Shown here in pieces: positions 1,219 through 52,212 of a stretch of 64,000 bases of DNA (position 1 is its first letter; every line of letters begins with the position of its first letter). The notes under the pieces are model-generated. The model did no database searches and was not told the DNA's origin. It saw only the letters and a program-made list of their open reading frames with translations. Location of the stretch: the IMG/VR virus record IMGVR_UViG_3300021964_000012, positions 124,001 to 188,000 of that record, one strand, 5' to 3'. The position numbers and the translations under genes were made by a program.

Positions 1219-1398
1219 TTACTCTGCTTTTAATACTTCTACTAGAACAGGCCCAGGAGCACCTTCACTGGCAAGTTGTGTAATTACTTGCTCTAGTTGT
1301 GAAATTACATCTTGACTTAGTAATTCTCTACTAGGAGAATCGTCTTTAACCAGTTCGCTTACTGTGATTGCTATTGATGTTGAATTTATCTTTGCCAT
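1219..1398 (-). CDS. small hypothetical protein (59 aa), likely leaderless
   Basis: Manual translation MAKINSTSIAITVSELVKDD...VEVLKAE*; ATG lies 5 nt after ATAAATA. Confidence 0.6.
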   Translation of the reverse strand: MAKINSTSIAITVSELVKDDSPSRELLSQDVISQLEQVITQLASEGAPGPVLVEVLKAE

Positions 1399-1416
1399 GC
1401 TGTTATTTATCCATTC

Positions 1417-3711
1417 CTATTCTTGTGTTTCATTGACAGTTACAATACCATTTGTGTCTATGTAAGCATCACTGGGTGAGCCTTTAGGTTTAACATCAAG
1501 TGTTATTCTTGGACGTTTGCCTTTGAACCATACATCAGCAGTTACATGAACATTTTCCAGTTTTTCAAAAAGTATCTTTTTACTTAACGGCACTTTGATA
1601 ATTTCGTCAATCTTTCTGCCCAATGGTCTTGCACCCATTTTAGGATCATATCCAACGTCAACAAGATATTCTACCATTGCTTCTGTTACAATAATATTAA
1701 TATTTTTTTGTTTTAGGTTTGCTCTGAGTTCGTTGATAAACTTTGCAACAATTTTTTTGATTGCAAATGGTTCTAGTGTTTTGAACTTGACTATCAGATC
1801 TAATCTGTTGCGTAGTTCTGGCTTGAAAAAATCTTTTACTGCTTTGTCTTCACTGCCAGTACGTACAAGTTCTTGACCAAATCCAATATTGTTGTTTTCG
1901 TTGTCTCTAGCACCAAGATTTGATGTTAGTATAATAATACAGTTTTTTACATCAACAGTTTTGCCATTTGATCCTGTGATCTTACCTTCGTCCATCATTT
2001 GTAGAAATATGTTTGCTACATCTGGATGGGCTTTTTCAATTTCATCAAACAGCAGGACACTGTAGGGATTTTTACTAACATCTGAAATTAGTTTACCACC
2101 GCTGAGTGTGCTATCATCATAGCCGACAAAACCTGGAGGTGCGCCAAGCAAGCTGCTAACTGTGTGTTTGTCTTGATATTCGCTCATGTCATAACGCAAC
2201 AGATGCATTTCTAAATTGTTGCTCAACAGTTTAGCAAATTCAGTTTTACCTGTACCAGTAGGACCAAGAAATAAAAATGCTCCCATTGGACGATTTGGCG
2301 TGCTTATACCTGCATAGTTTACATAGAGCCTTTCTAGCACTTCGTCTACTACATGATCTTGTCCAAAAAGTTTTTCTTTGATGTTGTTATCTAGATTTTG
2401 TACTTTTTCACTAGCATCGCTCGCCACTTTTGTTTCTGGAATGTTTGCAATTCTTGAAACCTGTTTGTCAATTAAATCTTCTGTAATTACCAAACCTTCT
2501 TGATCTTTAACACGTTCAGTTGCACATGCTCCATCTACTAGGTCTATGCTCTTGTCTGGATTTTTTTTGTCGTGCATGTATCTAGTTGCTAATTCAACTG
2601 CTTTTTCAATGGCGCCTTTGTCTATTGCGACATTGTGAAACTTTTCTAATCTAGGACGCAATCCTTCTAATATCTTTACGGTGGTTTCTTTGTCAGGTTC
2701 ATCTATGCTGACTTTGTAAAAGCGCCTCATCAATGCACGATCTTTTTCAAAACTCTCGTAAAATTCTTCCCAGGTTGTACTTGCAATAACTTTGAGATTG
2801 CCTTTGGTAATTGCAGGTTTGATCATGTTGGAAAAATCCAAACTGCTTCCACCTGTTGAACCAGCACCTTTCATGGTATGTGCTTCGTCTATAAAAAGTA
2901 TACAGTTCTTTTTTGATTCTAAAGCTGAAATAATATCTTTGAGTTTTTCTTCAAATTCGCCACGGTACTTAGAGCCAGCAAGTAGACTGCCTATTTCCAA
3001 ACCCCACACCTCAAAGTTTTTAAGGAACTTTGGTATTTTATTGTCTTTTATTCTAGTTGCCAAGCCTTCTGCAATAGCAGTTTTTCCAACACCTGGATCT
3101 CCTACCATTAATACATTACTTTTAAAACGTTTAGCTAATACTGTAACTATTTCTTCGAGTTCTGTTTCTCGACCAATAACTGGTTCAAGTTTATCGTCTT
3201 TGGCAAGTTTGCTCACATTTATGCAGTGCTCTTCGAGTATTTCATTTGCGGTTGAGATGTCAATTCCGTCTTTGGATTTACCATTATATGTTTGTTGCCA
3301 GTGCATTACAAATTCTTGTTTGACAAGTCCATGTTTCAGCATATAGTAGGCCGCATGACTGTTGGTTTCAGCCATGATTGCTAACCACAGATCAATGGTT
3401 TCCATACTTCGTCTACCACCAAACATAACCTGTGTTAATGCTCTGTTGAAAACTCTTTCAAGTGCATTTGTCTTTTTTGGGTCTCCTTTAACTGGATTGC
3501 TGACCAGCATGGTTTGTGAATCAATATATAATTGTAAATCTGACACAATAGCATCAGAACTGGAACCAAAAGACTCAATGCATCTTTTGAATTTTGGATA
3601 CTGCACCATTGCTAATGTAAGGTGTTCGATTGTCACATAATCGTGTTTCTTGTCTTTCGCAAGTTTATGAGCAGTTGCAAGTATTTGTTCTATTTCAGGA
3701 CTGTGTTGCAT
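1417..3711 (-). CDS. clpA: ClpA-type AAA+ unfoldase
   Basis: Clp N-domain, two Walker A motifs (GDPGVGKT, GPTGTGKT), GSKYRGEFEE pore loop, ClpP-docking IGF loop (NNIGFG), no ClpB M-domain. Confidence 0.92.
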   Translation of the reverse strand: MQHSPEIEQILATAHKLAKDKKHDYVTIEHLTLAMVQYPKFKRCIESFGSSSDAIVSDLQLYIDSQTMLVSNPVKGDPKKTNALERVFNRALTQVMFGGRRSMETIDLWLAIMAETNSHAAYYMLKHGLVKQEFVMHWQQTYNGKSKDGIDISTANEILEEHCINVSKLAKDDKLEPVIGRETELEEIVTVLAKRFKSNVLMVGDPGVGKTAIAEGLATRIKDNKIPKFLKNFEVWGLEIGSLLAGSKYRGEFEEKLKDIISALESKKNCILFIDEAHTMKGAGSTGGSSLDFSNMIKPAITKGNLKVIASTTWEEFYESFEKDRALMRRFYKVSIDEPDKETTVKILEGLRPRLEKFHNVAIDKGAIEKAVELATRYMHDKKNPDKSIDLVDGACATERVKDQEGLVITEDLIDKQVSRIANIPETKVASDASEKVQNLDNNIKEKLFGQDHVVDEVLERLYVNYAGISTPNRPMGAFLFLGPTGTGKTEFAKLLSNNLEMHLLRYDMSEYQDKHTVSSLLGAPPGFVGYDDSTLSGGKLISDVSKNPYSVLLFDEIEKAHPDVANIFLQMMDEGKITGSNGKTVDVKNCIIILTSNLGARDNENNNIGFGQELVRTGSEDKAVKDFFKPELRNRLDLIVKFKTLEPFAIKKIVAKFINELRANLKQKNINIIVTEAMVEYLVDVGYDPKMGARPLGRKIDEIIKVPLSKKILFEKLENVHVTADVWFKGKRPRITLDVKPKGSPSDAYIDTNGIVTVNETQE

Positions 3712-3732
3712 AATTCTCCTTTGTGTTTATAT

Positions 3733-4527
3733 TTATTGACTGTGTTTCTTGATAGCACGAATTATTTCATCAGGAATCGATACAGGAATCTTTGTGTTTA
3801 TTTTTACAAATATATCTCCAGGATTGTGACCAATTCTCTTTACACCACAGGATGCAAGACGCATGACACTACCTGGATTGGTTCTAGGTGGGATATTTAA
3901 GTTAAAACTGCGTCCTATAATATCTGTAATTTTGATATTGCCTCCAACTACAAGTGTCCACAGGTTTACGTCTTGTTCACTATGCATATCGTTGCCATGA
4001 CGTTGCCAACGTGGATGTGGCTTCAAACGATAGTGTATAACCAAATCTAAACCACCTGGTCCAAGTTTTGGATAACGTATGTTTTCGCCATCAACAACTC
4101 CTGGAGGAACATCTACTTCGATGGTATTTTGTCCAGTCTGCATTTGTAGTGCAAGAGTTCTTTTTCCACCTTTCACTGCATCTTCTAAATCAATTGCCAT
4201 TGTTATTCTTGCATCTCTTGGACGCGGTGGTCGATTAGGATGCATACGTTGTCCAAAAATATTGAATATAGTATCAAAGTCAAAGGGTTGACCTTGTGTT
4301 TGAGAAAATCCAAATCCTTGTTTTTGTGGATCAGAGCTACCAGTTTGATCATAGTATGCACGTTTATTAGGGTCTTTGAGTATATCATACGCATTGCTTA
4401 TTTCTGCAAATTTGCTGGCATCTCCTCCTCGGTCAGGATGATGCTCTTTGGCTTTTTCTTTATAAGCTCGCTTGATTGTATCAGCAGTTGCACCTTTTGC
4501 AACGCCCAATATGGTATAAGGATTCAT
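3733..4527 (-). CDS. dnaJ: DnaJ-family co-chaperone (type II, CbpA-like)
   Basis: J-domain with HPD, G/F region, C-terminal domain (GDL/GDI motifs), no zinc finger. Confidence 0.9.
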   Translation of the reverse strand: MNPYTILGVAKGATADTIKRAYKEKAKEHHPDRGGDASKFAEISNAYDILKDPNKRAYYDQTGSSDPQKQGFGFSQTQGQPFDFDTIFNIFGQRMHPNRPPRPRDARITMAIDLEDAVKGGKRTLALQMQTGQNTIEVDVPPGVVDGENIRYPKLGPGGLDLVIHYRLKPHPRWQRHGNDMHSEQDVNLWTLVVGGNIKITDIIGRSFNLNIPPRTNPGSVMRLASCGVKRIGHNPGDIFVKINTKIPVSIPDEIIRAIKKHSQ

Positions 4528-4541
4528 AGTATATTGTATTA

Positions 4542-4946
4542 CTATTCTTTGCTTTTGTCAAGCTCTTTGGTCATTGCTTTTTCGTAGTAAACAATAACCT
4601 CATTTTGTTGATTTATGAAACGTCTTAGTTCACTGATATTAAGTGCTAGATTTTCGTATGTATCAATGCTCATTGCAACAAATGCTAATTCACCATTTTG
4701 CTCTGTGAACTCAGCAATAAACGCTTCTAGATTGTTTTTGTTAACAACATATACTTGTGTGTCAGTAAGATTAATCGGCTTTGGTCTTGCCACTATCGGT
4801 ACTGTCACTTTTTGTACTTTTGTCACCACCTTGACTTCCGGTTCCGGCATTATTCGGCTGCAACCAGAAAGGAAGATCACTAGTACTGCCAGTGTTGTTG
4901 CCAGTTTCCGCCATGAGCTCACGCCATAGTTTAGCTGTTGCACCAT
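4542..4946 (-). CDS. outer-membrane spanin (Rz1-like lipoprotein)
   Basis: Hydrophobic signal with lipobox LSGC, Pro-rich mature part, overlaps the 3' end of the i-spanin, next to the lysozyme. Confidence 0.7.
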   Translation of the reverse strand: MVQQLNYGVSSWRKLATTLAVLVIFLSGCSRIMPEPEVKVVTKVQKVTVPIVARPKPINLTDTQVYVVNKNNLEAFIAEFTEQNGELAFVAMSIDTYENLALNISELRRFINQQNEVIVYYEKAMTKELDKSKE

Positions 4947-5716: not shown

Positions 5717-6377
5717 AGTTTTTTCCTTCTATTACATGGGTATTTATGTACTTTGCGGCCTCTAGATGTGCTTTTTCAAGTGGATGTCCGCCTGGTCCAA
5801 TAGGAAATTTTTTATGTTTTGCCCATTCTAAAAATGTATATCCGTAAAAATTTACAATATAATGGTTCACTTGTTTCTGTAAAGGTGTAACAAATTTTTC
5901 TTTTGAATACAACATCGGGTCCATACAAGTCATTATAAAGTCAATATTGTTTTGTTCCAGTAGGCAAATTGTACTATGTATTTGTTGTAGATTACGATGT
6001 AGATTCCATTTATCACTGTCTATGTGTTTGTAAAAATAATGGTTAAGTTTATCTTCGTGGCGTGGATGAGTAACTGCCCACCAACTGGTTTCTATATCAA
6101 TATAATCAAAACGTTCAAACCAACTCCAATTTATAATAAACAATGCATCTCTATATTTCTCAAGATACTTACATACACACATGCTTATCCAATGATTGCC
6201 ACGTCCGCCTATTGTCATGGAGTCATATTCGATGCCAAGTGTTTTTGCAACCAAGGCAGGCCAGGTGCTTAGACTGTGAGTATGATGTGATGCTATAGTA
6301 CACGATGTTGAGCAATCAGCCAGTTCGTCACCACGAGTGAAGCTGTCACCAAAAGCCAGTACTTTTTCATAAGGCAT
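5697..6377 (-). CDS. SGNH/GDSL-like hydrolase-fold protein
   Basis: AFGDSFTRG block I and C-terminal GHPL...H. Confidence 0.55.
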   Translation of the reverse strand: MPYEKVLAFGDSFTRGDELADCSTSCTIASHHTHSLSTWPALVAKTLGIEYDSMTIGGRGNHWISMCVCKYLEKYRDALFIINWSWFERFDYIDIETSWWAVTHPRHEDKLNHYFYKHIDSDKWNLHRNLQQIHSTICLLEQNNIDFIMTCMDPMLYSKEKFVTPLQKQVNHYIVNFYGYTFLEWAKHKKFPIGPGGHPLEKAHLEAAKYINTHVIEGKNYGHRQT

Positions 6378-7487: not shown

Positions 7488-7652
7488 TTGAGGCCTTTTG
7501 TTCTTACGTTAACAGTATTTAGTCCAATACTGAATTGTGGCCGCTAATATATTTAGCGAATAGTATTGTGATTTCACATACAGTATTTCTTATTTTTTTA
7601 TACTGTAAATATTATTGTGGGTAGCGAATAACCTCAACCTTTAGGAGATACA

Positions 7653-8379: not shown

Positions 8380-8482
8380 TGGCTCTGGGAGAAGGATTCG
8401 AACCTCCAAGGTTAAATATATTGCAGTACATTCAACCATACGGTTAACAGCCGTACGTGTTTACCAATTTCACCATCCCAGA
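8380..8482 (-). tRNA. tRNA-Asn(GUU), atypical class-II body with 11-bp variable arm (103 nt, CCA encoded)
   Basis: TCTGGGA TG GTG AAATTGGTAAA CAC G TACGG CT-GTT-AA CCGTA T GGTTGAATGTA CTGCAA TATATTTAACC TT GGAGG TTCGAAT CCTTC TCCCAGA G CCA; all stems pair; U1-A72, G73. Confidence 0.9.
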
Positions 8483-8488
8483 GTATTC

Positions 8489-9319
8489 TTATACTTTGTT
8501 GATCTTTTCTAGTGCAGGAATCATACGTGTCACACCTATGCCTCCGCCTACTCTTTGAAAGAAGTCAAACTCTAAAAACTTTTCTAGTTCTGCTTCGACT
8601 CTTTCCTTGCCAAACAACTTGAATAGTAGTTTACTATAAGCACCATCTGTAATACTATGGAATGTATCACGCATCATATCAACATCACATGAACGTTCTG
8701 CTGATCCAATAGTTTCCATACCACCTAGTATAACGTCCATCTTCTTTGCAGTATTTCCGTCATCGTTTCTGGCCATGTTCCAAAAAGGTGATGTTAGTTC
8801 AGGGAAGTTTGTAATAAGTGTTTGGCCAAACTCTTCTTCCATCTTAAGTTCGTGTTCTGCTTCCATTTCTGTATCAGCACCTAGTCCAAAATGTTGTTGC
8901 CATTCAGCATAGGTCTTTTCTGTAATATTACCAAATCCTAAGTATTCACATAGTTCATACTCCATGGATTTTAAATCATCTACACTGCCTGGCATTTCAA
9001 ATTCAAACATTGGAAATATTATATCATGTCTGCCTGGTATTGCATTAGGCTCTTGTCTATAGGAAGTGGAGACACAAAAAAACCCCTTACTGTCGGGGCT
9101 ACTTAATAATTCATGTTCCAACCACATCTGGCCGGTTTGCGGTAGTGGCCATACTTGGCCTGCGTAATTGTATGTTGCTACGTTGAATGGATCTTCACAT
9201 GCGGCTAGTATGCTCAATCTGTTTTGTGTGTGTACTTCAAGAAAACCTTTTTCCAAAAAAAATGACCTTAAAAGGCCAACTGTGGAAGTGAATTTGCTTG
9301 GGTCTATTAGTTGCGTCAT
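8489..9319 (-). CDS. class IIb aminoacyl-tRNA synthetase catalytic-domain-only protein (AsnRS-like / archaeal-type asparagine synthetase-like)
   Basis: Motif 1 (RSFFLEKGFLEVHT), motif 2 (SYRQE...RH...FPMFEFE), motif 3 (GGGIGVTRM), ETIGSAER; no N-terminal OB-fold anticodon-binding domain. Confidence 0.85.
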   Translation of the reverse strand: MTQLIDPSKFTSTVGLLRSFFLEKGFLEVHTQNRLSILAACEDPFNVATYNYAGQVWPLPQTGQMWLEHELLSSPDSKGFFCVSTSYRQEPNAIPGRHDIIFPMFEFEMPGSVDDLKSMEYELCEYLGFGNITEKTYAEWQQHFGLGADTEMEAEHELKMEEEFGQTLITNFPELTSPFWNMARNDDGNTAKKMDVILGGMETIGSAERSCDVDMMRDTFHSITDGAYSKLLFKLFGKERVEAELEKFLEFDFFQRVGGGIGVTRMIPALEKINKV

Positions 9320-9395
9320 TGCTTTTCCTTTTTTTACCTAAAAAAAATTTGCCCAAAAAAAAATTGGACGTTACTTGTTCATCGAGTTATTTATA
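9320..9395 (-). promoter_or_regulatory. late promoter TATAAATA, leaderless Met-Asn-Lys minigene (9371-9382) and putative attenuator leader
   Basis: Minus strand: TATAAATA ACTCG ATG AAC AAG TAA C GTCCAA T9 GGGC AAA T8 AGGT A7 GGA AAAGCA ATG. Confidence 0.6.
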
Positions 9396-11451: not shown

Positions 11452-11993
11452 TTTGTTATCTCCTCTTGTGTTATATGCAATTGACTTTTCATGTCATCTG
11501 TATTAAGGTACGCCAAGTTTATAATACTAGTAAAACCAATTACACGGGCTTCTGCTTGTTCGATCAAACGTTTGGTTGCCAACATACTGCCGCCAGTTGC
11601 AACCAAGTCATCTGCTATTAACACTCTATTAGCATGTCCTAACAGTCCTTCTTGTAGCACCAATGTATCTTCACCATACTCAAGTGCATAGGTTTCCTGC
11701 AACAAACTACCTGGATACTTGCTTCCTTTTTTACGCACCATAACAAAAGGCACTCCTATTGTAGCAGCCAACACTGCTCCTACTACAAATCCTCTGCTTT
11801 CAATACCCACTATGTGTGTGATATCACCGTTACGGTTGAATTGATCTTGAATTACAACTGCCATTTCGGCAGCAACTTGATTCCAAATTGGTTGTGCGAA
11901 CAAACTGTTTACATCATAAAAGTTTACACCTTCTACAGGATAATCCTGCACAGTTCGCATGTAATCTGTTGGTTTAGTTTTTACTGAAGACAT
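11448..11993 (-). CDS. apt: adenine phosphoribosyltransferase
   Basis: DYPVEGVNFYD, GIESRGF, VRKKG, YALEYG, PRPP loop LIADDLVATGGS; start moved to ATG at 11993 (GGAGG RBS). Confidence 0.9.
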   Translation of the reverse strand: MSSVKTKPTDYMRTVQDYPVEGVNFYDVNSLFAQPIWNQVAAEMAVVIQDQFNRNGDITHIVGIESRGFVVGAVLAATIGVPFVMVRKKGSKYPGSLLQETYALEYGEDTLVLQEGLLGHANRVLIADDLVATGGSMLATKRLIEQAEARVIGFTSIINLAYLNTDDMKSQLHITQEEITK

Positions 11994-13101
11994 AAACACC
12001 CTCCCATTTTTCTCTACCTTGTTTTCTATCATTGCCTACACCTGGACGTGTGTTAAGCATCATTTTAATTGTTTCTATGTGTTTGAATCCTAGTTTTTCT
12101 GCCGTCTCAATCCATCTTTGTGTAACTTCATAGGGTTCTTTTCTGTCGTAACTTTTATAGTCTGCAATGTTGGTAGCGAAAAGTCCTTCTCTATTGAGTC
12201 CTCTATGTATGTGTTCAATGGTTGGGACAACGTATCCGTCAAACCATTGATCTTCTGTTTTAAATTGTACCATACACTGGGTTTCTTCATCGCTATACTT
12301 TTCCAAGTTAAAATAAGGAGGACTACTAAATGCTAAATCTACATCCTCGGGTTGATATTCTTCGCTAACACTTTGTACTATGGTACTTCTTACGCCTGTT
12401 GCTTCATCAATGATATCATTTAGATAATTAAGATATTTTACAGTTTCAGTATTAGGTTCAACACCTATGTAATCATACTTAAAATTACTACTACCTATTC
12501 CTAAAAGTCTACCACCATAGCCGCAACTGTAATCATACACTCTGCCCCAAAGCACAGGACATAAATGTTCTGCTATTGCTTTAGCATTTTGTGCCTTAAA
12601 GTTAGTAACATTTTCGCCTGTAACTAGTTCAAGTGCAGTTCTTAATTGTGTGGGTCTTAGCAGTCGTTCACCAGTTCTAAATTCAAAACAGATACGTATA
12701 GCACGTTTAAGTTTACGTTCATCATAGAATCTATCTCGCAAACTATTTGAACCTCTACCTTTAGGTTCTGCAGTCATCATGTTAGGAAACAAAAATCGGT
12801 TAATGGTTTGTCCTCGATTGTTTCCAAGTCCAATCTTGCCTTGTTCTACATTGTTATACGATAGTTTGCTGAATTTACGAACTGCTTCTACCAGTCCCTT
12901 GTGTGTAAAATACACAATAGGAACAAGATCAATTGAACGATATATGTCATATACACTTTCGATAGTGCCTTCAGGATCTTGATCATATTGTGCTTTGTCA
13001 AACGCATCAAGTTGGTTATAAACACTTTCATAACCAGTGAACTCATCACTTTCAATTTGTGATGGATCAATATTCCATATTTGATATAAATCTTGAATCA
13101 T
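11974..13101 (-). CDS. amino (N6A/N4C) DNA methyltransferase
   Basis: SAM motif YDYSCGYGGRL and catalytic SPPYF. Confidence 0.8.
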   Translation of the reverse strand: MIQDLYQIWNIDPSQIESDEFTGYESVYNQLDAFDKAQYDQDPEGTIESVYDIYRSIDLVPIVYFTHKGLVEAVRKFSKLSYNNVEQGKIGLGNNRGQTINRFLFPNMMTAEPKGRGSNSLRDRFYDERKLKRAIRICFEFRTGERLLRPTQLRTALELVTGENVTNFKAQNAKAIAEHLCPVLWGRVYDYSCGYGGRLLGIGSSNFKYDYIGVEPNTETVKYLNYLNDIIDEATGVRSTIVQSVSEEYQPEDVDLAFSSPPYFNLEKYSDEETQCMVQFKTEDQWFDGYVVPTIEHIHRGLNREGLFATNIADYKSYDRKEPYEVTQRWIETAEKLGFKHIETIKMMLNTRPGVGNDRKQGREKWEGVYVFSKN

Positions 13102-13107
13102 AAGTGT

Positions 13108-13135
13108 ATTATAACACTTTTATGTAGTTTGTCAA
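13108..13135 (-). promoter_or_regulatory. sigma70-type promoter giving a leaderless methyltransferase mRNA
   Basis: TTGACA-16-(TGT)TATAAT-ACACTT-ATG, no SD. Confidence 0.7.
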
Positions 13136-15030: not shown

Positions 15031-15059
15031 ATTATATTATGATTAGCGAGGTAAGTCAA
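15031..15059 (-). promoter_or_regulatory. sigma70-type promoter for the clamp loader
   Basis: TTGACT-17-TATAAT, then AGGAG RBS. Confidence 0.7.
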
Positions 15060-17649: not shown

Positions 17650-17682
17650 TTACAACTCCTATTAACTGCGTAGTTAATATAT

Positions 17683-26201: not shown

Positions 26202-26243
26202 TGGGATCCTCTAACTTACTGTTATGAGTATTTATGGCTTTTA

Positions 26244-26705: not shown

Positions 26706-26738
26706 CTATACATCCTTTAATACTTGTGTATTTATGTC

Positions 26739-30107: not shown

Positions 30108-30389
30108 TTAGTGTAAAATCACGTTCTTTGGAATTGATAGATGACTATCGTCAATTTTTTCAAAACCCATTTGTTCAATTTGATCATAAAAGTTATCTGG
30201 TAATTCAAATACTTTATCATCTTGTTCAATTGCTTTTTCTTGTTCAACGCCAAGCAAACGCATTAGACCTCCGACGTGAACATGTCGAACTCCGTTATCA
30301 AACAAAGTAGCACAAATTGCAATAACAAGTCCAGCTATCGCATCATTGTCACCAAACATTGAGTCTATTTCTGCTTTGCTCTTAAACAT
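30108..30389 (-). CDS. hypothetical protein, likely leaderless
   Basis: ATG at 30389 lies 5 nt after ATAAGTA. Confidence 0.55.
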   Translation of the reverse strand: MFKSKAEIDSMFGDNDAIAGLVIAICATLFDNGVRHVHVGGLMRLLGVEQEKAIEQDDKVFELPDNFYDQIEQMGFEKIDDSHLSIPKNVILH

Positions 30390-30425
30390 GCTCTTACTTA
30401 TATGCAAATGCACGATATTGATAAT

Positions 30426-32492: not shown

Positions 32493-34372
32493 TCTAGAAA
32501 AAGAGTTGTTTTTTCTGTGGAATATTCTACACGAGCCTGCCATTTTTTGTTTTTACGTGTACTGTTCATCCACTGTGGCCAGGTCACAACCAAGCCTTTT
32601 GCTGGATATGCTCTGTGTATTCGATAGTCAGTAGGGCGAATATTGAGGTCTTCTTTACCAAGTGCATATTCAAACACGTTGGCTCCTAGTGTTATTTCTG
32701 TCACTGGCTCATGTGCAAATATAGTTTGCTGCCGTTCTTGTATGTACATTAAATCTAAGATTAGTTTATCATCTGGAGCAAAGTGTTGTGCTACTGTAAG
32801 TATATCTTGGAAAGTTTGTGAACGATTGGTTATTCCTAGATCTTCAATTACAGGTGCATAGGTTAAACCTGCTAAGAACATATTGAATTCTAAGCGATCA
32901 GCATAACCTTGCCATTTTGTCAGCCATTTGTGTGCCGCACAATCTTTGTTTTCTAATCCCCAGTCTAACATATACTCATAAAACTTTTCAAATGGTACGC
33001 CGTGACGTTTGTTTAGATATCGTGTAATAATCTGTGTAAAACCATTGGCATCCATCATTGAAGTGTACCAAGTCCATAACCATAGTTTCTTCATTTGTTC
33101 TGCAGGCAAATCTTTTGTGCCTGTGAGTGTTTCTTGATATTCATCTACTATATTAGAAAAATAACTTTTAAGGGTGGTTTGTGTAATACCGTGTTTTTTC
33201 TTGTATTCAGGTTCATTCATCTCTGAGTTTTCAAGAATAGTCACAGGATATGCTTCTACAATAATATCTCTGCTCAACAGATCACACAAGCCTGTAGTCC
33301 ATGACTTCCAGGTTTCTCCGGGCAAGCCAATTATTAATTCTGTGTTTATGCTTAACCCTTCTTTGTGAGCAGTGTCTGCTACTTTCTGCATGGCTTCTTC
33401 TTTGAGATTTACACGTTTAATATGCTTCAGAACTTCTGGATTGGTACTTTGCAACGCCATAGTAAAACGTCGCATCATATCGGCTTCCATCAGTTTAACT
33501 GCCATGTCGACCAACTGCACTGTGGCATTTTTACTCCAGTTGGTATCAAACAACACTGGAAATCCATACTTCTTTTTTGTGCGAATAAGCATATCTGTGA
33601 TTTCCATATCTCTATCTTTGAATATACCAAAATTAGCATCTGTGTTTGTTATTAGTTCTAGTTTGTTTCGGCCTATCCATTCTAGTTCAGCTTCAATGCG
33701 TTCTAGGTTAAACTTCTTTACTTTAGAAAAGGTTGTACCTCCCCAGTCACAGAAGGTACACATAAACGGACAACCTCTGTTGGTTTCCAATACTGCATTC
33801 CAAATTTTACCTGGATACATGTCAGGCAAATGATCAAACAGTCCCATCAGATAAGGCGATGGTACTGCTGACAAATCCATTATACGTTGACTTGGACCTG
33901 TTAACACTGTCTTGCCGTTACGGTTGATGCTGATACCAGGCACCATTTCTTCGTCTTGTTTGCCGACAAAACTTTGCAACAATCCAGTAAAACTTATTTC
34001 ACCTTCTTGGTGTATGAGATAATCAATATAGGGTTTGTCTGCAAAAAAGTTTTCTGACTTGTTTGGTGTTTCTGCGCCACCAATAATTATTTTACATTCT
34101 GGATAACGAGCCTTTACGGCTTTAGCCAAAGCCTGATTGTAACTTACGTTCCATACGTAACTGCTTAGTCCAACAACCGCAGGGTCAACCATCTTATCCA
34201 CCAGCATGTCGATTGGCTCTTTTACACTGTACAAACCTGCAAGACAATAGTTGTCAAGTATATGAGGTTGTGTAGTTGCATAGGCCCAAACAACACCAAC
34301 ACTATATGGAAAGTAATAATAGTTGCTACCTGGCAACTCCAGACTCATTTGTGCCATGTAAACATTCTTCAT
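32483..34372 (-). CDS. cobalamin-binding radical SAM enzyme
   Basis: N-terminal B12-binding domain (VGLSSYVWN, IIGG), ETNRGCPFMCTFC, ELIIGLPGET; ATG at 34372 lies 5 nt after ATAAGTA. Confidence 0.88.
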   Translation of the reverse strand: MKNVYMAQMSLELPGSNYYYFPYSVGVVWAYATTQPHILDNYCLAGLYSVKEPIDMLVDKMVDPAVVGLSSYVWNVSYNQALAKAVKARYPECKIIIGGAETPNKSENFFADKPYIDYLIHQEGEISFTGLLQSFVGKQDEEMVPGISINRNGKTVLTGPSQRIMDLSAVPSPYLMGLFDHLPDMYPGKIWNAVLETNRGCPFMCTFCDWGGTTFSKVKKFNLERIEAELEWIGRNKLELITNTDANFGIFKDRDMEITDMLIRTKKKYGFPVLFDTNWSKNATVQLVDMAVKLMEADMMRRFTMALQSTNPEVLKHIKRVNLKEEAMQKVADTAHKEGLSINTELIIGLPGETWKSWTTGLCDLLSRDIIVEAYPVTILENSEMNEPEYKKKHGITQTTLKSYFSNIVDEYQETLTGTKDLPAEQMKKLWLWTWYTSMMDANGFTQIITRYLNKRHGVPFEKFYEYMLDWGLENKDCAAHKWLTKWQGYADRLEFNMFLAGLTYAPVIEDLGITNRSQTFQDILTVAQHFAPDDKLILDLMYIQERQQTIFAHEPVTEITLGANVFEYALGKEDLNIRPTDYRIHRAYPAKGLVVTWPQWMNSTRKNKKWQARVEYSTEKTTLFLEKG

Positions 34373-34406
34373 ATTCATACTTATGTTAATTTATTTTATT
34401 CAAAAG

Positions 34407-34433
34407 AAAAGCCACCCTAGGGTGGCTTTTTTT
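34407..34433. terminator. bidirectional intrinsic terminator
   Basis: AAAAGCCACCC-TA-GGGTGGCTTTTTTT. Confidence 0.85.
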
Positions 34434-35642: not shown

Positions 35643-35649
35643 AAACTAT

Positions 35650-37841: not shown

Positions 37842-38518
37842 ATCATAAAATACTCAACAAACTAGAACAGATGATCCATATATCACCTCAACTTTTACGC
37901 AATGCAAATACCATGCGTCAAGCAATACAGGCTACATTCAACGTTACCGTAGAGGATGTTGAATATGCAAACATTGGACAACTAGTGGATAGGATCGATG
38001 ACAAAGTCCTTGAACATTATTTTGCCAACGTTTGGCAAGGTGAAATGTCAAAATACAAGTACAGTGGTCCTGCATTAATAGATGAAATAAACAAACTAAA
38101 ACCTAGACGTGTGCTAGATATTGGATGTGGGTATCATGAGTTTCGAGGCAAGATAGACAATATCATAGGTATTGATCCTTATAATACAAAAGCAGACATG
38201 ATGATAAAACTACTGGATTATCATCCTCAAGAACGTTTTGATGCAGTACTAGCACTAGGCTCAATTAACTTTGGATCAACAGATAAAATATTTGCTGAAC
38301 TAGAACATGCAGTCAGTTTGTGCAATCCAGGTGCAGTACTATTTTTTAGAGCAAATCCAGGACTGCCACACGATAAAACAGAATCAAGTTGGATCAGTTT
38401 CTATCCCTGGGACGCAAACTTTGTGGTAAACTGTGCTAATCAACTGGGTGTAGACATATTGGATCTACGTACAGACAGTCATAAAAATCGACTGTACTTT
38501 GTTTGGCGTACTAAGTAA
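37838..38518 (+). CDS. class I SAM-dependent methyltransferase
   Basis: VLDIGCG, GIDP, FDAVLALGSINF. Confidence 0.8.
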   Translation: MNHKILNKLEQMIHISPQLLRNANTMRQAIQATFNVTVEDVEYANIGQLVDRIDDKVLEHYFANVWQGEMSKYKYSGPALIDEINKLKPRRVLDIGCGYHEFRGKIDNIIGIDPYNTKADMMIKLLDYHPQERFDAVLALGSINFGSTDKIFAELEHAVSLCNPGAVLFFRANPGLPHDKTESSWISFYPWDANFVVNCANQLGVDILDLRTDSHKNRLYFVWRTK

Positions 38519-38613
38519 AAAGACACTTAGAAGCAACGCCTGAATGTAAAAGAGTTCGCTTCTAATATCCCCTAATTTTTTAAAGGCACTGCCGTTATGG
38601 CCGTGGATTCGTT

Positions 38614-40053
38614 GTGGCGGAAATTTATGCCCTTGTGGCAGGTACATTGTATGGACTACTAATAGGTATTATACCCGGAGCAGGTGCTACCACTGGCTTG
38701 ATATTCTTGTTTCCTTTTATGATGATGTTTCCAGATCCTTATCTAGCAGTAATATTTGTAATGGCAGTGGTAGCAGCCTCAACAACAGGTGATACTTACA
38801 CTGGTGTGTTGCTAGGAATACCCGGTGCTAACAGTGCAGCCGCTACCATGGTAGATGGATTTCCACTTGCACTTCAAGGTCGTGCAACCTATGCTATCAG
38901 TGCCGCAGTAACAACATCAACTGTTAACGGATTACTATGGGGTAGTTTGGTTTTCTTTTTATTGCCTTGGTATACAGGACTTATAATGATATTTGGTGTT
39001 CCTGAGCTGTGGGCTTTTACCTTGCTTGCACTGGTAACAGTGACCTTTGTAAGTAACCGATGGTGGATACGTGGATTAATTGCATTATGCACAGGAATAT
39101 TTGTTGGAATGATAGGCGTGGATCCAAATACAAATGCTGATCGTTTTACATTTGGTTGGGAATACTTAGGCGATGGCGTGCAAATATTGCCAATGATTGC
39201 AGGCTTGTTTGCCATACCAGAGTTATTGGATGGACTTAAAAACAGACACACAACTGCTTCAGCAACAACTACAAATGGAACACAGACTCGTGAAGGAATC
39301 TTAGCAGTATGGAGCAATCGTTGGTTAGCACTACGTGGAGGATTCATTGGTGCATTTATTGGTATACTTCCAGGACTAGGTGGAGCAATGGCAGACTGGA
39401 TGGCATATGGTCAGGCAGTTGCTACAACAAAGAATCCTTCAGTGCCTTTTGGCAAAGGCAACATCAGAGGAGTAATTGGGCCAGAAGGTGCTAACAATGC
39501 ACAAAAAGCAACATCAATGATTCCTACAGTTTTATTTGGAATACCTGGAGCTCCTTTTGCGGCTATTATTATTGGTTTGTTTATGTACTTGGACTTTGAG
39601 CTTGGTACTATTGATCTAGCACAAGACGATCAATTCTTTGATAGTATGCTTTATGGATTCATGTTGGCAACACTGTTGGTTGGTGCTCTATGCTTATGGT
39701 TAACAAAATATATTGCCATGATTGCGACTGTGCCTTACAAATACTATTTTCCTCTACTGTTAACGTTTATAATAGCGGCATGTGTACAATACACAGGTGG
39801 ATGGGAAGATTATGCTATATTGATCGTCTGCTCCATAGTAGGAATCAGTGCAAAGAAATTCAAGTTCTCAAGACCTGCAATGCTATTTGGTTTTATACTT
39901 GCAGAAAGAGTTGAGGCTTTAACTATACAGATGCACGGTCTGTATACATTCGACAGACTGTTAACTCGTCCTATATTTTGGACATTGTTAGCAGTTGTAA
40001 TAGCTGTGTTAATTTGGGGTTTAACCAAACGCAGTAAACTAGATTATGCATAA
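38614..40053 (+). CDS. tctA: tripartite tricarboxylate transporter large subunit TctA
   Basis: GIIPGAG, GIPG..AAATMVDGFPLA.QG, GILPGLG, PEGANNA, GIPG; polytopic; GTG start. Confidence 0.88.
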   Translation: MAEIYALVAGTLYGLLIGIIPGAGATTGLIFLFPFMMMFPDPYLAVIFVMAVVAASTTGDTYTGVLLGIPGANSAAATMVDGFPLALQGRATYAISAAVTTSTVNGLLWGSLVFFLLPWYTGLIMIFGVPELWAFTLLALVTVTFVSNRWWIRGLIALCTGIFVGMIGVDPNTNADRFTFGWEYLGDGVQILPMIAGLFAIPELLDGLKNRHTTASATTTNGTQTREGILAVWSNRWLALRGGFIGAFIGILPGLGGAMADWMAYGQAVATTKNPSVPFGKGNIRGVIGPEGANNAQKATSMIPTVLFGIPGAPFAAIIIGLFMYLDFELGTIDLAQDDQFFDSMLYGFMLATLLVGALCLWLTKYIAMIATVPYKYYFPLLLTFIIAACVQYTGGWEDYAILIVCSIVGISAKKFKFSRPAMLFGFILAERVEALTIQMHGLYTFDRLLTRPIFWTLLAVVIAVLIWGLTKRSKLDYA

Positions 40054-42019: not shown

Positions 42020-42034
42020 GAACTAAGTAAAAAC

Positions 42035-42709
42035 ATGGACAACATATTCATTATATTCTCGCCCGGAAGTGGTGGGAACCATCTTGCTAATATATTAAGC
42101 ACTGCTGATAATTTTGTCAGCAGGTGTACTGTTGAAGATTATGATCACCATCCAACGCCGGAGCAACAAAGCCGTGCTTATGCAAATGCACATTATTCTA
42201 AAATTGATAATCTTGATCCTGATATTGTAAAAAATTTACCACCAACGACCAATGTCTTATGCGGTCATTTTTACAGCTATAATCGTCTAGAATTGTTAGA
42301 ATTAACTAATAAATTTGTGAACAAAGTTATTGTTGTATTAGAACCACCTATTTCAGGACTTGCCTACAAAAGATATATGTATCACAATGATAAAATTCGA
42401 CCACAACTTTACAATGAGCAGCGTTTGATTTATTCAACACATTTTATTAAAAAATATTTTAATCAAAAAACTGTGTCTATTTCATGTGAAGCAATTTTTG
42501 AACACAAATTAGACAGGCTATATTCCATTATCGAAGATAAATTAGATCTTGAGGTTGACAAAAATATGTGTAATCAAATACACAAAAAATGGCACTGGCC
42601 GGTTAATCTTGAACAGAGCAACCGTCCCAAAATTCCCCAACATCCTTTATATCATGATATAAAGGATGACATCCTTACTTTAAAGCCACTTGTCAGAGGT
42701 AAAATCTAA
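42035..42709 (+). CDS. sulfotransferase-like hypothetical protein, likely leaderless
   Basis: FSPGSGGNHLAN P-loop-like start; ATG 5 nt after CTAAGTA. Confidence 0.5.
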   Translation: MDNIFIIFSPGSGGNHLANILSTADNFVSRCTVEDYDHHPTPEQQSRAYANAHYSKIDNLDPDIVKNLPPTTNVLCGHFYSYNRLELLELTNKFVNKVIVVLEPPISGLAYKRYMYHNDKIRPQLYNEQRLIYSTHFIKKYFNQKTVSISCEAIFEHKLDRLYSIIEDKLDLEVDKNMCNQIHKKWHWPVNLEQSNRPKIPQHPLYHDIKDDILTLKPLVRGKI

Positions 42710-50226: not shown

Positions 50227-50502
50227 TTAGGACAAATAATAGTAGGCCATTCCGGCTACGGCTACCAAGGTCATCACACTGTTGGTGATAATAAGACTCC
50301 ATTCACGCCACATGCAACTCACTATCAACCATACCACACCACCAGCTATTAGTACTACCGGTCCAATAGGATACAATTCAGGAAAAGCACTGTTGATAAA
50401 ACTTCCAACCACAAGTGTAGCCGTGGCTATCCATTTCAAATAAAAATCAATCTTCATGTGCAGTCCTTTCAAATGCTTCAATCTCAGCTTGTTTACGTTC
50501 AA
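50227..50502 (-). CDS. small three-TM membrane protein, paralogue of 41780..42019
   Basis: KW.AT...YP.G....G..W..V..W.EWSLII. Confidence 0.55.
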   Translation of the reverse strand: MNVNKLRLKHLKGLHMKIDFYLKWIATATLVVGSFINSAFPELYPIGPVVLIAGGVVWLIVSCMWREWSLIITNSVMTLVAVAGMAYYYLS

Positions 50503-50765
50503 TCATGAGATCAATTGTTCGCACTGCAATAACTGTCTCAGGCTTGTTTACTCGCTTGATACTTTCGACAACACCTTCAAGTTCTGCAATATCATGCAGT
50601 AATTCATTTATCATTGAGACACCTCTTGATAAGCATTGTATGCTTCAATTGTTCGATTACTAAAAGCATACGGGTTACGTTGAATAAAGATTAACAATTC
50701 TTTCATTGTTAAACCTAAAAAATCACACTCTCTTTTGAGAACTGTTGTTGCACCACGAATAGTCA

Positions 50766-51134
50766 TTACGCTGCCTCCTTAGACTTTGTGCAAACATAAG
50801 GCTTGTTCCATTTACCAACATTGATATCTGTGTAATGACTAACATGGAAATAGTCGCTTTGGATATCTGACTTATCAAACCAGTCTGGACCTTTCATGGC
50901 GGCTAACAATTCGTTTAGGAAATCTTTAGCAACACCTGTGTAATGTCTATCAATATGGTAAACATTTACACTGGTAAAATCGTTGTGATCAAAATCAATT
51001 GGGCCACTTTGTAGGTTAACTACTAAACTAAAGTGATGCTTTACTGCAATAGTACCCTTCATATTGTACTTTTTAAGAACTGCTTTGATTGCTGGGCTTA
51101 ACTTTGCTTTTGTTTCTTGACTAACATATGCCAT
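50766..51134 (-). CDS. hypothetical early protein
   Basis: 122 aa, WFDKSDIQSDYFH...GKWNKPY; first gene behind the early cassette. Confidence 0.65.
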   Translation of the reverse strand: MAYVSQETKAKLSPAIKAVLKKYNMKGTIAVKHHFSLVVNLQSGPIDFDHNDFTSVNVYHIDRHYTGVAKDFLNELLAAMKGPDWFDKSDIQSDYFHVSHYTDINVGKWNKPYVCTKSKEAA

Positions 51135-51139
51135 CTAAC

Positions 51140-51198
51140 TCTCCTATTTTCTAACTATACATATATAATAACACACTATATGATATTGTCAACCTTTT
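51140..51198 (-). promoter_or_regulatory. early promoter/leader cassette
   Basis: AAAAAGGTTGACA-16-TATTAT-ATATGTATAGTTAGAAAATAGGAGA. Confidence 0.75.
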
Positions 51199-51346
51199 TA
51201 TATAAAAAGAATAATAAAATTAGATTATTGCTCGATAGTAAACAATAATATTGTTTCAAATTCGATTGTTGCTATTTAAGCAAGACTGTTTTTACAAAAA
51301 ACGGCTCTAAAATAGCCAAAAAACCTGGTTTTTCAATTTTTCCTTG

Positions 51347-51456
51347 TATAAATAAAAATGTAGCAAGAAATTGTTACAAGGCACCTGGGAAAGACCAAGT
51401 GACGGCGGAAATAGACCGCGGTATTGCTCCCCTCAAGCATATAACATTAATAGGAG
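51347..51456 (+). promoter_or_regulatory. late promoter TATAAATA followed by a four-hairpin structured leader
   Basis: TGTAGCAA-GAAA-TTGTTACA; CACCTGG-GAAAGA-CCAAGTG; GCGG-AAATAGA-CCGC; TGCT-CCCCTCA-AGCA; then AGGAG. Confidence 0.55.
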
Positions 51457-51462
51457 AAAAAA

Positions 51463-51621
51463 ATGGCAAAAAAGCTATCTAAGACTCTTGTGGCTATGTT
51501 TCAAAACATGTTTGATTCAAGAAGTGCCCAAGAAAAATATCTAGCACAGAGTGCAGACTTGTGCGAGTTAGAAATGAGAATGAAAAAACTACATACTACA
51601 TTTGGAAGGTTCGGTATATAA
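51463..51621 (+). CDS. small protein, DUF3563-like (52 aa)
   Basis: Manual translation ...EKYLAQSADLCELEMRMKKL...; AGGAG RBS. Confidence 0.55.
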   Translation: MAKKLSKTLVAMFQNMFDSRSAQEKYLAQSADLCELEMRMKKLHTTFGRFGI

Positions 51622-51622
51622 A

Positions 51623-51835
51623 ATGACTGCTTTAGTATTAAACACAAAAACTTTTTTACAAGATTTACTAGTAGGCTGGAGTCTTGCTACTGGTAAAATC
51701 AAAGATTCATATAAGAAGGTATCTCATATTGCTGAGAGAATTGGTACTGCACGAGCAGCATCACATTTAGCCAGCATGGGACATTATGAAATTGCAAAAT
51801 CATTGATGGAATATAATGAAAAAGAAGGAAAGTAA
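51623..51835 (+). CDS. small hypothetical protein
   Basis: ATG coupled to the upstream stop; G.ARAA..LA.MG.YE.AK motif. Confidence 0.55.
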   Translation: MTALVLNTKTFLQDLLVGWSLATGKIKDSYKKVSHIAERIGTARAASHLASMGHYEIAKSLMEYNEKEGK

Positions 51836-51981
51836 GATGAAAAATTTTTTACAAGCAACCACAGGCGTATTTGCACTTTTAGTAATTCTTGGTGCAGTAG
51901 GCATGGTAAGCACTGTATCAGTTGTAGCATAATGTGGCCATATACCGACGAGGAAAATGAGTTTCTCAGTTAAGTACATGT

Positions 51982-52212
51982 ATGAAAAGTATTTTAATAG
52001 TAGTAGTAATGTTGTTAAATGTGCAACAGGATCTATACATCATTCAAAAACCTAGCTTCGGGAGTGTACCCGAATGTTCTTATTTTGTACAACTGTATTC
52101 ACAACTGATTATCAGTAAGGCAAGGATAGAGTATCCAGAGCATGAGTTAGACAATATCTATTGTGTTCCAAAAGAAAGTCTTGATCAGTTATACCAACAA
52201 GCTCATATTTAA
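51982..52212 (+). CDS. small secreted hypothetical protein, likely leaderless
   Basis: Signal-like N-terminus, two Cys; ATG 5 nt after TTAAGTA. Confidence 0.55.
   Translation: MKSILIVVVMLLNVQQDLYIIQKPSFGSVPECSYFVQLYSQLIISKARIEYPEHELDNIYCVPKESLDQLYQQAHI

What the first reader, a model, noticed from the sequence alone, without database searches (positions are those of the whole stretch)
1396..51984. Recurrent leaderless late genes: TAA(A/G)TA + exactly 5 nt + ATG
Seen at 1398(-) ATAAATA-ACAGC-ATG, 9382(-) TATAAATA-ACTCG-ATG, 30389(-) ATAAGTA-AGAGC-ATG, 34372(-) ATAAGTA-TGAAT-ATG, 42035(+) CTAAGTA-AAAAC-ATG and 51982(+) TTAAGTA-CATGT-ATG, none with an SD in the spacer. Known: T4 gp55 late promoters are a lone TATAAATA box with transcription starting a few nt downstream. 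Inference: the phage routinely uses leaderless late mRNAs and a relaxed late consensus, which also corrects several predicted starts.
Basis: partly seen in the sequence, partly recalled or inferred. Interest (0 to 1): 0.6.

Follow-up and report, generated by a model that had tools for sequence, protein, structure and literature searches.

The report
Phage promoters fused directly to start codons
In this 328-kb uncultured marine jumbo phage and its relatives, a minority of genes carry a promoter box (late-type TAAATA/TAAGTA, or a host-type -35/-10 pair) so close to the ATG that the mRNA should begin at the start codon with no ribosome-binding leader; phage T4 and the nearest cultured relative PA5oct lack this layout, and no transcript ends have been mapped yet.

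Summary
All six pattern matches are at the stated coordinates. In the window alone the count is not above chance (6 against 3.3 in shuffles). Genome-wide the signal is real: TAA[AG]TA is followed by an ORF-opening ATG after exactly 5 nt 20 times, against about 2.5 at other spacings.

Three relatives (GC 41-50%) show the same pattern. Spacings peak sharply at 4-7 nt, almost none fall at 9-15 nt, and a broad hump at 16-30 nt holds normal Shine-Dalgarno leaders.

TAAATA(C) sits in front of tail sheath, portal, baseplate, tail fibre and terminase genes, and the genome encodes a gp55-family late sigma. It is therefore a relaxed T4-type late promoter. TATAAATA itself is not enriched.

- The base before the ATG is a pyrimidine in 82/96 cases.
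- A third of these genes head divergent units.
- Some follow terminators by about 20 nt.
- The class is conserved between orthologues.
- Full TTGAC-N17-19-TAnAAT promoters show the same fusion at their own canonical 6-nt spacing.

Together these make leaderless mRNAs the best explanation, for both late and early genes. About 6% of genes are of this kind, so "routinely" overstates it. Two of the six sites fail: 9382 opens a 3-codon ORF, and 51982 is a doubtful ORF. No transcription start data could be obtained.

The parts
1396..1409 (-). Late-type box TAAATA (1404-1409), 5 nt (acagc), then the ATG (1398) of a 59-aa gene at 1219-1398.
   Evidence: Pattern match. The gene was called by my coding model. 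Orthologues in G001 and G002 align from residue 1 and carry TAAATA + 7 nt + ATG.
30387..30400 (-). Late-type box TAAGTA (30395-30400), 5 nt (agagc), then the ATG (30389) of a 93-aa gene at 30108-30389. The ORF listing gives a GTG at 30413 instead.
   Evidence: The G001 orthologue sits behind a terminator and carries TAAATA + 8 nt + ATG.
34370..34383 (-). Late-type box TAAGTA (34378-34383), 5 nt (tgaat), then the ATG (34372) of a 629-aa B12-binding radical SAM protein at 32483-34372.
   Evidence: The G002 orthologue aligns from residue 1 (MKNVY against MHNVY), which favours 34372 over the ATG at 34378.
34407..34430 (-). Intrinsic-terminator-like hairpin (10 pairs plus a T run) that ends 23 nt upstream of the TAAGTA box of the 34372 start.
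   Evidence: Transcripts from upstream should stop here, so the downstream gene needs a promoter within the next ~30 nt.
42024..42037 (+). Late-type box TAAGTA (42024-42029), 5 nt (aaaac), then the ATG (42035) of a 224-aa gene at 42035-42709.
   Evidence: It is the only start candidate in its ORF. No family match.
9380..9395 (-). Full TATAAATA octamer (9388-9395), 5 nt, then ATG-AAC-AAG-TAA. This is a 3-codon ORF, not a gene. It probably acts as a late promoter with a ~60-nt leader for the aaRS-like gene at 8489-9319.
   Evidence: The leader folds no better than shuffles.
51971..51984 (+). TAAGTA, 5 nt, then the ATG of a 76-aa ORF (51982-52212). Doubtful as a gene.
   Evidence: Coding score -2.05, and no tblastn match in G001, G002 or G004. 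No PHROG match.
13102..13135 (-). Host-type promoter TTGACA-N16-TATAAT (13108-13135), 6 nt (acactt), then the ATG (13101) of a 375-aa gene at 11974-13101. This is a leaderless early-type fusion.
4528..4561 (-). Host-type promoter TTGACA-N17-TACAAT (4533-4561), 5 nt (atact), then the ATG (4527) of a DnaJ-like gene at 3733-4527.
26229..26234 (-). TAAATA(C) late box 27 nt upstream of the SD-led start of the 746-aa tail-fibre-like gene at 23961-26201. It is an example of the leadered class.
3730..3735 (-). TAAATA late box 18 nt upstream of the SD-led start of the ClpA-like gene at 1417-3711 (leadered class).
26729..26734 (-). TAAATA(C) late box 23 nt upstream of the SD-led gene at 26244-26705. Further leadered-class boxes lie at 5741-5746(-), 7516-7521(-), 17680-17685(-), 27233-27238(-), 35325-35330(-), 52605-52610(+) and 55038-55043(+).

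Best explanation
TAAATA(C), with a TAAGTA variant, is the -10-like box of this phage's late promoters. It is read by host RNA polymerase carrying the phage's gp55-family sigma.

As in T4, transcription should begin about six bases after the box. In most late genes this gives a 12-25-nt leader with a Shine-Dalgarno site. In a conserved minority (about 23 genes here, four of them credible in the window) the ATG sits 4-7 nt after the box, most often 5. The A of the ATG is then the first transcribed base, and the mRNA is leaderless and translated without an SD.

The same fusion occurs at host sigma70-type promoters, at their own canonical 6-nt spacing. Leaderless expression is therefore a general habit of this phage clade, not of late genes only.

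Shown: the motif, its spacing law, its gene association, its conservation, and the sigma gene. Inferred: the transcription start and the leaderless translation.
For: 1. Sigma. A 296-aa gp55-family protein matches phrog_12791 at 1e-73, phrog_234 at 1e-23 and T4 gp55 at 5e-8. T4 pocket residues N13, Y97 and T99 are kept. It is 66-68% identical in three relatives.
2. Promoter nature of the box.
- TAAATA is 12.7-fold enriched in -30..-1 of starts.
- 21-43% of all its copies lie at -36..-4 of gene starts, far more than any other A4T2 anagram.
- No conserved positions lie further upstream.
- It precedes baseplate wedge, tail sheath, portal, tail fibre/spike, terminase and virion proteins.
3. Spacing law, pooled over four genomes. 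There are 96 starts at 4-7 nt (45 at 5), 13 at 9-15 nt and 127 at 16-30 nt. This is what one expects if leaders too short for an SD do not work. The 5-nt gap equals the T4 distance from box to +1 (PMC2988020; P23 sequence in PMC7892883).
4. The base at -1 is a pyrimidine in 82/96 of these starts (23/23 in this genome, 43/45 at spacing 5), against 45% of other genes (Fisher 6e-15). This fits the known preference of bacterial RNA polymerase for a pyrimidine at -1 and a purine at +1. It has no obvious meaning for translation.
5. A promoter is required at these places. 33/96 of these genes head divergent units, against 10% of other genes (p 2e-9). Some intergenic regions are ~43 bp long and hold two back-to-back boxes, each 5 nt from its ATG. 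Terminator hairpins end 20-23 nt before the ATG or box.
6. Conservation. The terminase orthologues of about 35 of 75 related loci keep TAA[AG]TA-N5-ATG while the spacer and the upstream context differ. The class is shared by 16/30 orthologue pairs, against 13/366 for other genes (p 5e-13). Spacers drift between 4 and 7, and protein alignments start at residue 1.
7. Independent class. TTGAC-N17-19-TAnAAT promoters have the first ORF-opening ATG at 5-7 nt in 16 cases (12 at exactly 6), at 8-18 nt in 3, and at 19-39 nt in 58.
Against: - No transcript 5' end was seen. The only RNA data are assembled contigs of metatranscriptomes, mostly from 90-95% relatives. Some cross the sites at 34372 and 30389, which could mean read-through or DNA carry-over.
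- gp33 and gp45 homologues were not found by sequence.
- In T4, A(-8) sits in a specific pocket (PMC7892883), so a G there (TAAGTA) is unexpected even though T99 is conserved.
- The raw pattern count in this AT-rich genome is only about 2 sd above shuffles.
- Gene calls and start choices come from my own simple caller.
- The host is unknown, so its capacity for leaderless translation is unknown.
Confidence: 0.75

Rival explanations
1. The box is a promoter, but transcription starts at a fixed point inside or just after it. The mRNAs then carry very short leaders of 1-8 nt rather than none. Translation would still be SD-independent, but not strictly 5'-AUG-dependent.
For: Spacers vary from 4 to 7 nt, so a rigid start point would leave 0-2 extra bases. 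Published work often counts UTRs under 10 nt as 'leaderless' (PMC8244752).
Against: The pyrimidine is found at -1 of the ATG at every spacer length. At spacing 7, the 6th base after the box is mostly C, a poor start base. The sigma70-type class peaks exactly at the canonical 6 nt.
Confidence: 0.12
2. TAARTA-N5-AUG is an RNA-level signal rather than a promoter. It could be a re-initiation or coupling context in which TAA is the upstream stop codon. It could be a weak non-canonical SD (UAAG pairing with the 3' end of 16S rRNA). It could be the operator of a translational regulator.
For: In 14/96 cases the TAA is the stop of the upstream gene, and 26 more have a co-directional gene within 30 nt. 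RNA-library contigs cross two of the window sites. UAAG is complementary to the CUUA-3' end of an E. coli-type 16S rRNA (from general knowledge, not tested here).
Against: - 33/96 genes head divergent units, and others follow terminators.
- The same box occurs 16-30 nt upstream of genes that have their own SD, where it cannot be a ribosome site.
- TAAATA lacks the G needed for the UAAG pairing.
- Of 19 starts with TAA at -11, 17 are followed by NTA, so the stop codon alone does not explain the motif.
- The pyrimidine at -1 and the parallel sigma70 fusions are not explained.
Confidence: 0.06
3. The pattern is a compositional accident of an AT-rich genome with TAA stops and A-rich start contexts.
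For: The window count is not significant. This genome is only 2 sd above shuffles. PA5oct and T4 hold similar raw counts with no enrichment.
Against: - The spacing-specific peak is significant.
- Relatives with GC 47-50% show 5-fold excess over shuffles.
- The class is conserved between orthologues.
- There is the -1 pyrimidine bias and the anagram control.
Confidence: 0.02

Closest known systems
Phage T4 late promoters (gp55-dependent TATAAATA box; Geiduschek & Kassavetis 2010, PMC2988020; Shi et al. 2021, PMC7892883)
   Same: - A gp55-family sigma is encoded.
- The promoter is a lone AT-rich -10-like box with no -35 element.
- The core TAAATA is identical, and a C often follows it, as in T4 P23.
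- The box lies in front of virion genes.
- The 5-nt distance from box to inferred +1 is the same.
   Different: - Positions -13/-12 are relaxed (A at -12 in only 52%), and the full octamer is not enriched.
- G is tolerated at -8 (TAAGTA).
- The sigma is 296 aa against 185, with an insert of about 110 aa and H95 replaced by F.
- gp33 and gp45 were not detected by sequence.
- T4 shows no excess of TAAATA-N4-7-ATG: 16 against 20 in the control.
'TA-led' leaderless genes of bacteria, with the -10 box about 10-12 bp upstream of the start codon (Zheng et al. 2011, PMC3160421; Deinococcus-Thermus, PMC12340547)
   Same: The genomic signature is the same: a -10-like box at a fixed short distance from the ATG, no SD, and a separate population of leadered genes. 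The sigma70-type fusions found here (TTGAC-N17-19-TAnAAT + 6 nt + ATG) are this kind exactly.
   Different: Here the layout is in a virus. It is used with a phage-specific late sigma as well as with the host sigma. It covers a small share of genes (about 6%) in a genome that otherwise relies on strong SD sites.
Leaderless phage transcripts: lambda cI from PRM, and Thermus phage phiYS40 middle/late genes (Sevostyanova et al. 2007; recalled from memory, paper not held)
   Same: Phage genes expressed from mRNAs that begin at the AUG. As I recall, the leaderless phiYS40 transcripts are its later (middle and late) genes.
   Different: phiYS40 infects a host phylum where leaderless genes are common, and it does not use a gp55-type sigma. 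Lambda cI is a single regulatory case. I could not read the phiYS40 paper, so this comparison is a lead, not a test.
Pseudomonas phage PA5oct (Arenbergviridae), the nearest cultured relative (Lood et al. 2020, PMC7318152)
   Same: Terminase is 53% identical, ClpA-like about 38%, and gp55-like 39%. Transcription depends on the host RNA polymerase according to that paper. TAAATA boxes are visible in front of its structural genes.
   Different: It has no peak of TAAATA or TAAGTA at 4-7 nt from ATGs. Its terminase has an ordinary leader. The paper reports only sigma70-like promoters.

Membership tests
T4-type (gp55-dependent) late promoter | The phage encodes a gp55-family late sigma factor. | tested here: met
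   G000 319713-320603(-): phrog_12791 at 1e-73 and phrog_234 at 1e-23. T4 gp55 matches at E 1.5e-5 (tblastn) and 5e-8 (BLASTP), with N13, Y97 and T99 conserved.
T4-type (gp55-dependent) late promoter | An 8-bp TATAAATA box at -13..-6. | tested here: not met
   The full octamer has 13 copies against 17 for the reversed control. Only the 6-bp core TAAATA (-11..-6) is enriched, with A at -12 in 52% and no preference at -13. Variation at -13/-12 is known in T4 relatives such as Aeh1 (PMC2988020).
T4-type (gp55-dependent) late promoter | No conserved -35 element. | tested here: met
   No position from -40 to -3 relative to the box exceeds 50% in 61 gene-proximal copies.
T4-type (gp55-dependent) late promoter | Located in front of late (virion and packaging) genes. 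| tested here: met
   Baseplate wedge, tail sheath, portal, tail fibre/spike, terminase and virion structural proteins. True timing of expression was not measured.
T4-type (gp55-dependent) late promoter | Co-activator gp33 and sliding clamp gp45. | tested here: inconclusive
   T4 gp45, PF02916 and T4 gp33 gave no match in the genome. Both proteins diverge fast, and the tool warns that an empty answer shows nothing.
T4-type (gp55-dependent) late promoter | Transcription starts about 6 nt after the box. | not testable with these tools
   Only assembled RNA-library contigs were available. Indirect support comes from A at the 6th base in 57% and a pyrimidine at the 5th in 59% of gene-proximal boxes, and from the -1 pyrimidine rule in the ATG-fused class.
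Leaderless (TA-led) genes | A -10-like promoter box at a fixed distance of about 10-12 bp from the start codon. | tested here: met
   The first T of the box lies 10-13 nt from the ATG, most often 11. Sigma70-type boxes lie 6 nt from the ATG.
Leaderless (TA-led) genes | No Shine-Dalgarno site between the promoter and the start. | tested here: met
   Spacers of 4-7 nt hold no SD, while most other genes show a purine-rich peak at -11..-8.
Leaderless (TA-led) genes | The start codon is AUG. | tested here: inconclusive
   96 ATG against 6 GTG/TTG candidates at 4-7 nt. Since 92% of all called starts are ATG anyway, the test has little power.
Leaderless (TA-led) genes | The mRNA 5' end coincides with the start codon. 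| not testable with these tools
   One read-laying run on contigs of four metatranscriptomes gave no information on starts or ends.
Translational coupling / termination-reinitiation | The stop codon of a co-directional upstream gene overlaps or abuts the start region. | tested here: not met
   The TAA of the motif is the upstream stop in only 14/96 cases. 33/96 have a divergent neighbour, and 19/96 have a gap over 30 nt.

The most novel reading that the evidence does not exclude
A whole clade of uncultured marine and salt-marsh jumbo phages (several hundred IMG/VR contigs share the terminase) runs a two-track translation programme. A conserved set of genes, including terminase, several radical SAM enzymes and small proteins, is made from true 5'-AUG mRNAs launched by both host-sigma and gp55-type promoters. 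This would let those genes escape whatever happens to SD-dependent initiation during infection. TAAGTA would be a box variant favoured at such fusions. If so, it would be the first gp55-type late system wired for leaderless expression, and a sign that the unknown host, or the phage, supports efficient leaderless translation.
Probability: 0.15. Interest if true: 0.75.

Novelty: new variant of a known kind. Interest (0 to 1): 0.55.

Why it matters
1. It gives a concrete, testable rule for annotating starts in a large group of uncultured jumbo phages. Where the box lies 4-7 nt upstream of an ATG, that ATG is the start (for example 34372 rather than 34378, and 30389 rather than the GTG at 30413).
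2. It defines the late promoter of the PA5oct-like lineage as (A)TAAATA(C). The PA5oct paper did not report this.
3. It would extend leaderless gene expression to T4-type late transcription. The independent sigma70-type fusions show that the host of these phages can probably translate 5'-AUG mRNAs, which is a clue to host identity and to how phage genes stay translatable late in infection.
4. The strict gap in the spacing distribution (almost nothing at 9-15 nt) is a clean natural illustration that very short leaders do not work.

Tried and rejected
- T4's exact octamer. TATAAATA is not enriched, so a strict T4 consensus was rejected.
- RNA evidence. Eight metatranscriptome runs hold 5-18% of the words of window 29000-38999. 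Four were laid on window 29500-35499, within the 6,000-letter limit. Only short contigs appeared, mostly 90-95% alike, and no starts or ends could be read.
- Searches for T4 gp45, PF02916 and T4 gp33 were empty and are inconclusive.
PF00562 is absent while the controls ring. PF00940 is absent, but no control rang, so that result is inconclusive.
- Phage-encoded helpers of SD-less translation. Ribosomal protein S21 and IF3 were not found.
- PA5oct and T4 as carriers of the same layout. Neither has a peak.
- The GTG/TTG test for AUG dependence had too little power.
- A preference of TAAGTA for the ATG-fused class is only a trend: 9/23 against 7/39, p 0.08.
- The 3-codon ORF at 9382 as a leader-peptide attenuator. 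The leader folds no better than shuffles, z -0.03.
- Megablast of window 20414-26201 against phage records found no match.
- The large protein searches were not used, because the family scans sufficed.

Full report
**What the window is.** The window is bases 124001-188000 of a 328,292-bp virus record with direct terminal repeats and 37% GC. My simple coding-potential caller finds 387 genes, 316 of them on the minus strand. The nearest cultured relatives are distant. Pseudomonas phage PA5oct (Arenbergviridae) has 53% terminase identity, and Sinorhizobium phage Phosso and Agrobacterium phage Atu_ph07 follow. At least 597 IMG/VR stretches encode a relative of the terminase. The 80 best kept are 69-100% identical to it. 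Related sequence turns up in marine and salt-marsh metatranscriptome runs.

**The observation.**
- In the window the count (6) is not above dinucleotide shuffles (3.3 +/- 1.7).
- In the whole genome it is only about 2 sd above them (24 against 15.5 +/- 4.0).
- The signal lies in the spacing. Given the 372 real copies of TAA[AG]TA, an ATG follows after exactly 5 nt 24 times, against a mean of 7.1 for the other spacings 0-30.
- For ATGs that open ORFs of at least 50 aa the figures are 20 against 2.5.
- At the fixed position -11..-6 of called starts, TAAATA and TAAGTA rank 2nd and 4th after the SD hexamer AGGAGA. Of 19 starts with TAA at -11, 17 continue with NTA, so an upstream stop codon alone is not the cause.
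- Two of the six sites fail as genes. 9382(-) opens ATG-AAC-AAG-TAA. The 76-aa ORF at 51982(+) has a negative coding score and no homologue in three relatives.

**What the motif is.** Most genes have an ordinary SD, seen as a purine peak at -11..-8.
- TAAATA is 12.7-fold enriched in the 30 nt before starts.
- It falls into two classes: 16-30 nt upstream with an SD in between, or 4-7 nt upstream with none.
- Of the 15 anagrams of A4T2 it is the rarest in this genome. It is also by far the most concentrated upstream of genes, with 21-43% of all copies in four genomes.
- The extended consensus is (A)TAAATA(C). Nothing is conserved further upstream. A purine, mostly A, is favoured at the sixth base after the box.
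- The leadered class precedes baseplate wedge, tail sheath, portal, tail fibre/spike and virion proteins. The ATG-fused class includes terminase, a virion protein, a gp25-like baseplate protein and radical SAM enzymes.
- The genome encodes a 296-aa gp55-family sigma that keeps T4's N13, Y97 and T99. Its own gene sits behind a TTGACA-N16-TATAAT promoter.
- No RNA polymerase beta-like domain was found.
- The T4 octamer TATAAATA is not enriched.

The box is therefore best read as a relaxed T4-type late promoter. Relaxation at -13/-12 is already known among T4 relatives (PMC2988020).

**Why leaderless.** In T4 the box occupies -13..-6, so five bases separate it from +1 (PMC2988020; P23 sequence in PMC7892883). 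With the same geometry, the A of an ATG placed 5 nt after the box is +1. Five further lines agree.
1. Pooled over this genome and three fully fetched relatives (GC 41-50%, terminase 71-74% identical), candidate ATGs lie at 4-7 nt 96 times, at 9-15 nt 13 times and at 16-30 nt 127 times. That is a sharp peak, a gap where a leader would be too short for an SD, and a hump of normal leaders. In the GC-richer relatives the raw pattern is 5-fold above shuffles.
2. The base before the ATG is a pyrimidine in 82/96 fused starts (23/23 here), against 45% elsewhere (p 6e-15). This holds at every spacer length. Bacterial RNA polymerase shows this preference at -1/+1 (established knowledge), and the preference has no role in an mRNA that lacks that base.
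3. A promoter is needed exactly there. 33/96 fused genes head divergent units, against 10% of other genes. Some related loci have ~43-bp intergenic regions with two back-to-back boxes, each 5 nt from its ATG. Terminator hairpins end 20-23 nt before the box or ATG at window 34430-34407 and at genome 218827-218800.
4. The layout is conserved while its surroundings change. About 35 of 75 terminase orthologues keep TAA[AG]TA-N5-ATG with differing spacers and upstream genes. 16/30 orthologue pairs share the class, against 13/366 for other genes. Spacers drift between 4 and 7, some genes switch to the leadered form, and protein alignments begin at residue 1.
5. Host-type promoters behave the same way at their own spacing. 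After TTGAC-N17-19-TAnAAT the first ORF-opening ATG lies at 5-7 nt in 16 cases (12 at exactly 6, the canonical distance from the -10 hexamer to +1), at 8-18 nt in 3, and at 19-39 nt in 58. Two such fusions are in the window, at 13101(-) and 4527(-).

**Limits.** No 5' end was observed.
Some of them cross the sites at 34372 and 30389. That could be read-through, DNA carry-over or assembly, and it decides nothing.
- gp33 and gp45 were not detected.
- T4 gp55 reads A(-8) in a specific pocket (PMC7892883), so the G of TAAGTA is unexplained.
- All gene calls are my own. The host is unknown.

**Comparison and novelty.** The promoter kind (gp55-type) and the expression mode (a -10 box next to the ORF, giving a leaderless mRNA) are both known (PMC3160421, PMC12340547). 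Leaderless phage transcripts are also known. I did not find the combination described.
- T4 shows no excess: 16 against 20 in the control.
- PA5oct shows no peak, and its paper reports only sigma70-like promoters.
- Full-text searches for leaderless jumbo-phage or gp55 promoters returned nothing comparable.

I therefore rate it a new variant of a known kind. It covers about 6% of genes, not the routine mode, and it is shared by early-type and late-type promoters.

**Verdict.** The best explanation is promoters fused directly to start codons, giving leaderless mRNAs, at confidence 0.75. Interest is 0.55.

Noticed in passing
window 13102-13135(-) and 4528-4561(-); 16 sites in four genomes: Complete host-type promoters (TTGAC-N17-19-TAnAAT) lie 6 nt (sometimes 5 or 7) from an ATG, with no SD. 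The leaderless layout is therefore not limited to late genes. The window examples drive a 375-aa gene of unknown function and a DnaJ-like gene.
   Followed up: yes
window 8383-8482(-): Rfam finds a tRNA (56 bits) with anticodon loop CUGUUAA, that is GUU (Asn). It carries a 29-nt insertion in the variable region, and ARAGORN misses it. It lies directly downstream of a 276-aa class II aminoacyl-tRNA-synthetase core (PF00152, window 8489-9319).
   Followed up: partly
window 9371-9395(-): One of the genome's 13 full TATAAATA octamers is followed after 5 nt by a 3-codon ORF (Met-Asn-Lys-stop) and a T-rich ~60-nt leader, in front of the aaRS-like gene. The leader's predicted fold is no better than shuffles.
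   Followed up: partly
window 15043-16734(-), 32483-34372(-), 35762-37315(+); genome 261580-262782(-), 60928-61884(-): There are at least five radical SAM paralogues, one of them with a B12-binding domain, which is many for one phage. Several belong to the ATG-fused promoter class.
   Followed up: no
window 1417-3711(-): A 764-aa ClpA/ClpB-like AAA+ protein (phrog_4871, E 1e-235), about 40% identical to those of Atu_ph07, Phosso and PA5oct.
   Followed up: no
window 31342-31371(-): A perfect 12/12 sigma70 consensus (TTGACA-18-TATAAT) lies inside the gene at 31204-31875, about 140 nt upstream of the next start (31201).
   Followed up: no
window ~50500-52300: This stretch holds only short, weakly coding ORFs on both strands, and includes the doubtful ORF at 51982. 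It may be non-coding. Rfam finds nothing there.
   Followed up: partly
genome 61903-63340 (L014 9403-10840, minus strand): Three tRNA genes (Thr-TGT, Trp-CCA, Arg-ACG). A TAAGTA + 4 nt + ATG start (genome 61884) follows the tRNA-Thr by 18 nt.
   Followed up: no
L032, L033 (related loci): Intergenic regions of ~43 bp between divergent genes consist of little more than two back-to-back boxes (TAAATA and TAAGTA), each 5 nt from its ATG.
   Followed up: partly
whole genome: Strand bias is strong: 316 of 387 called genes lie on the minus strand. The relatives show the mirror image or the same bias.
   Followed up: no
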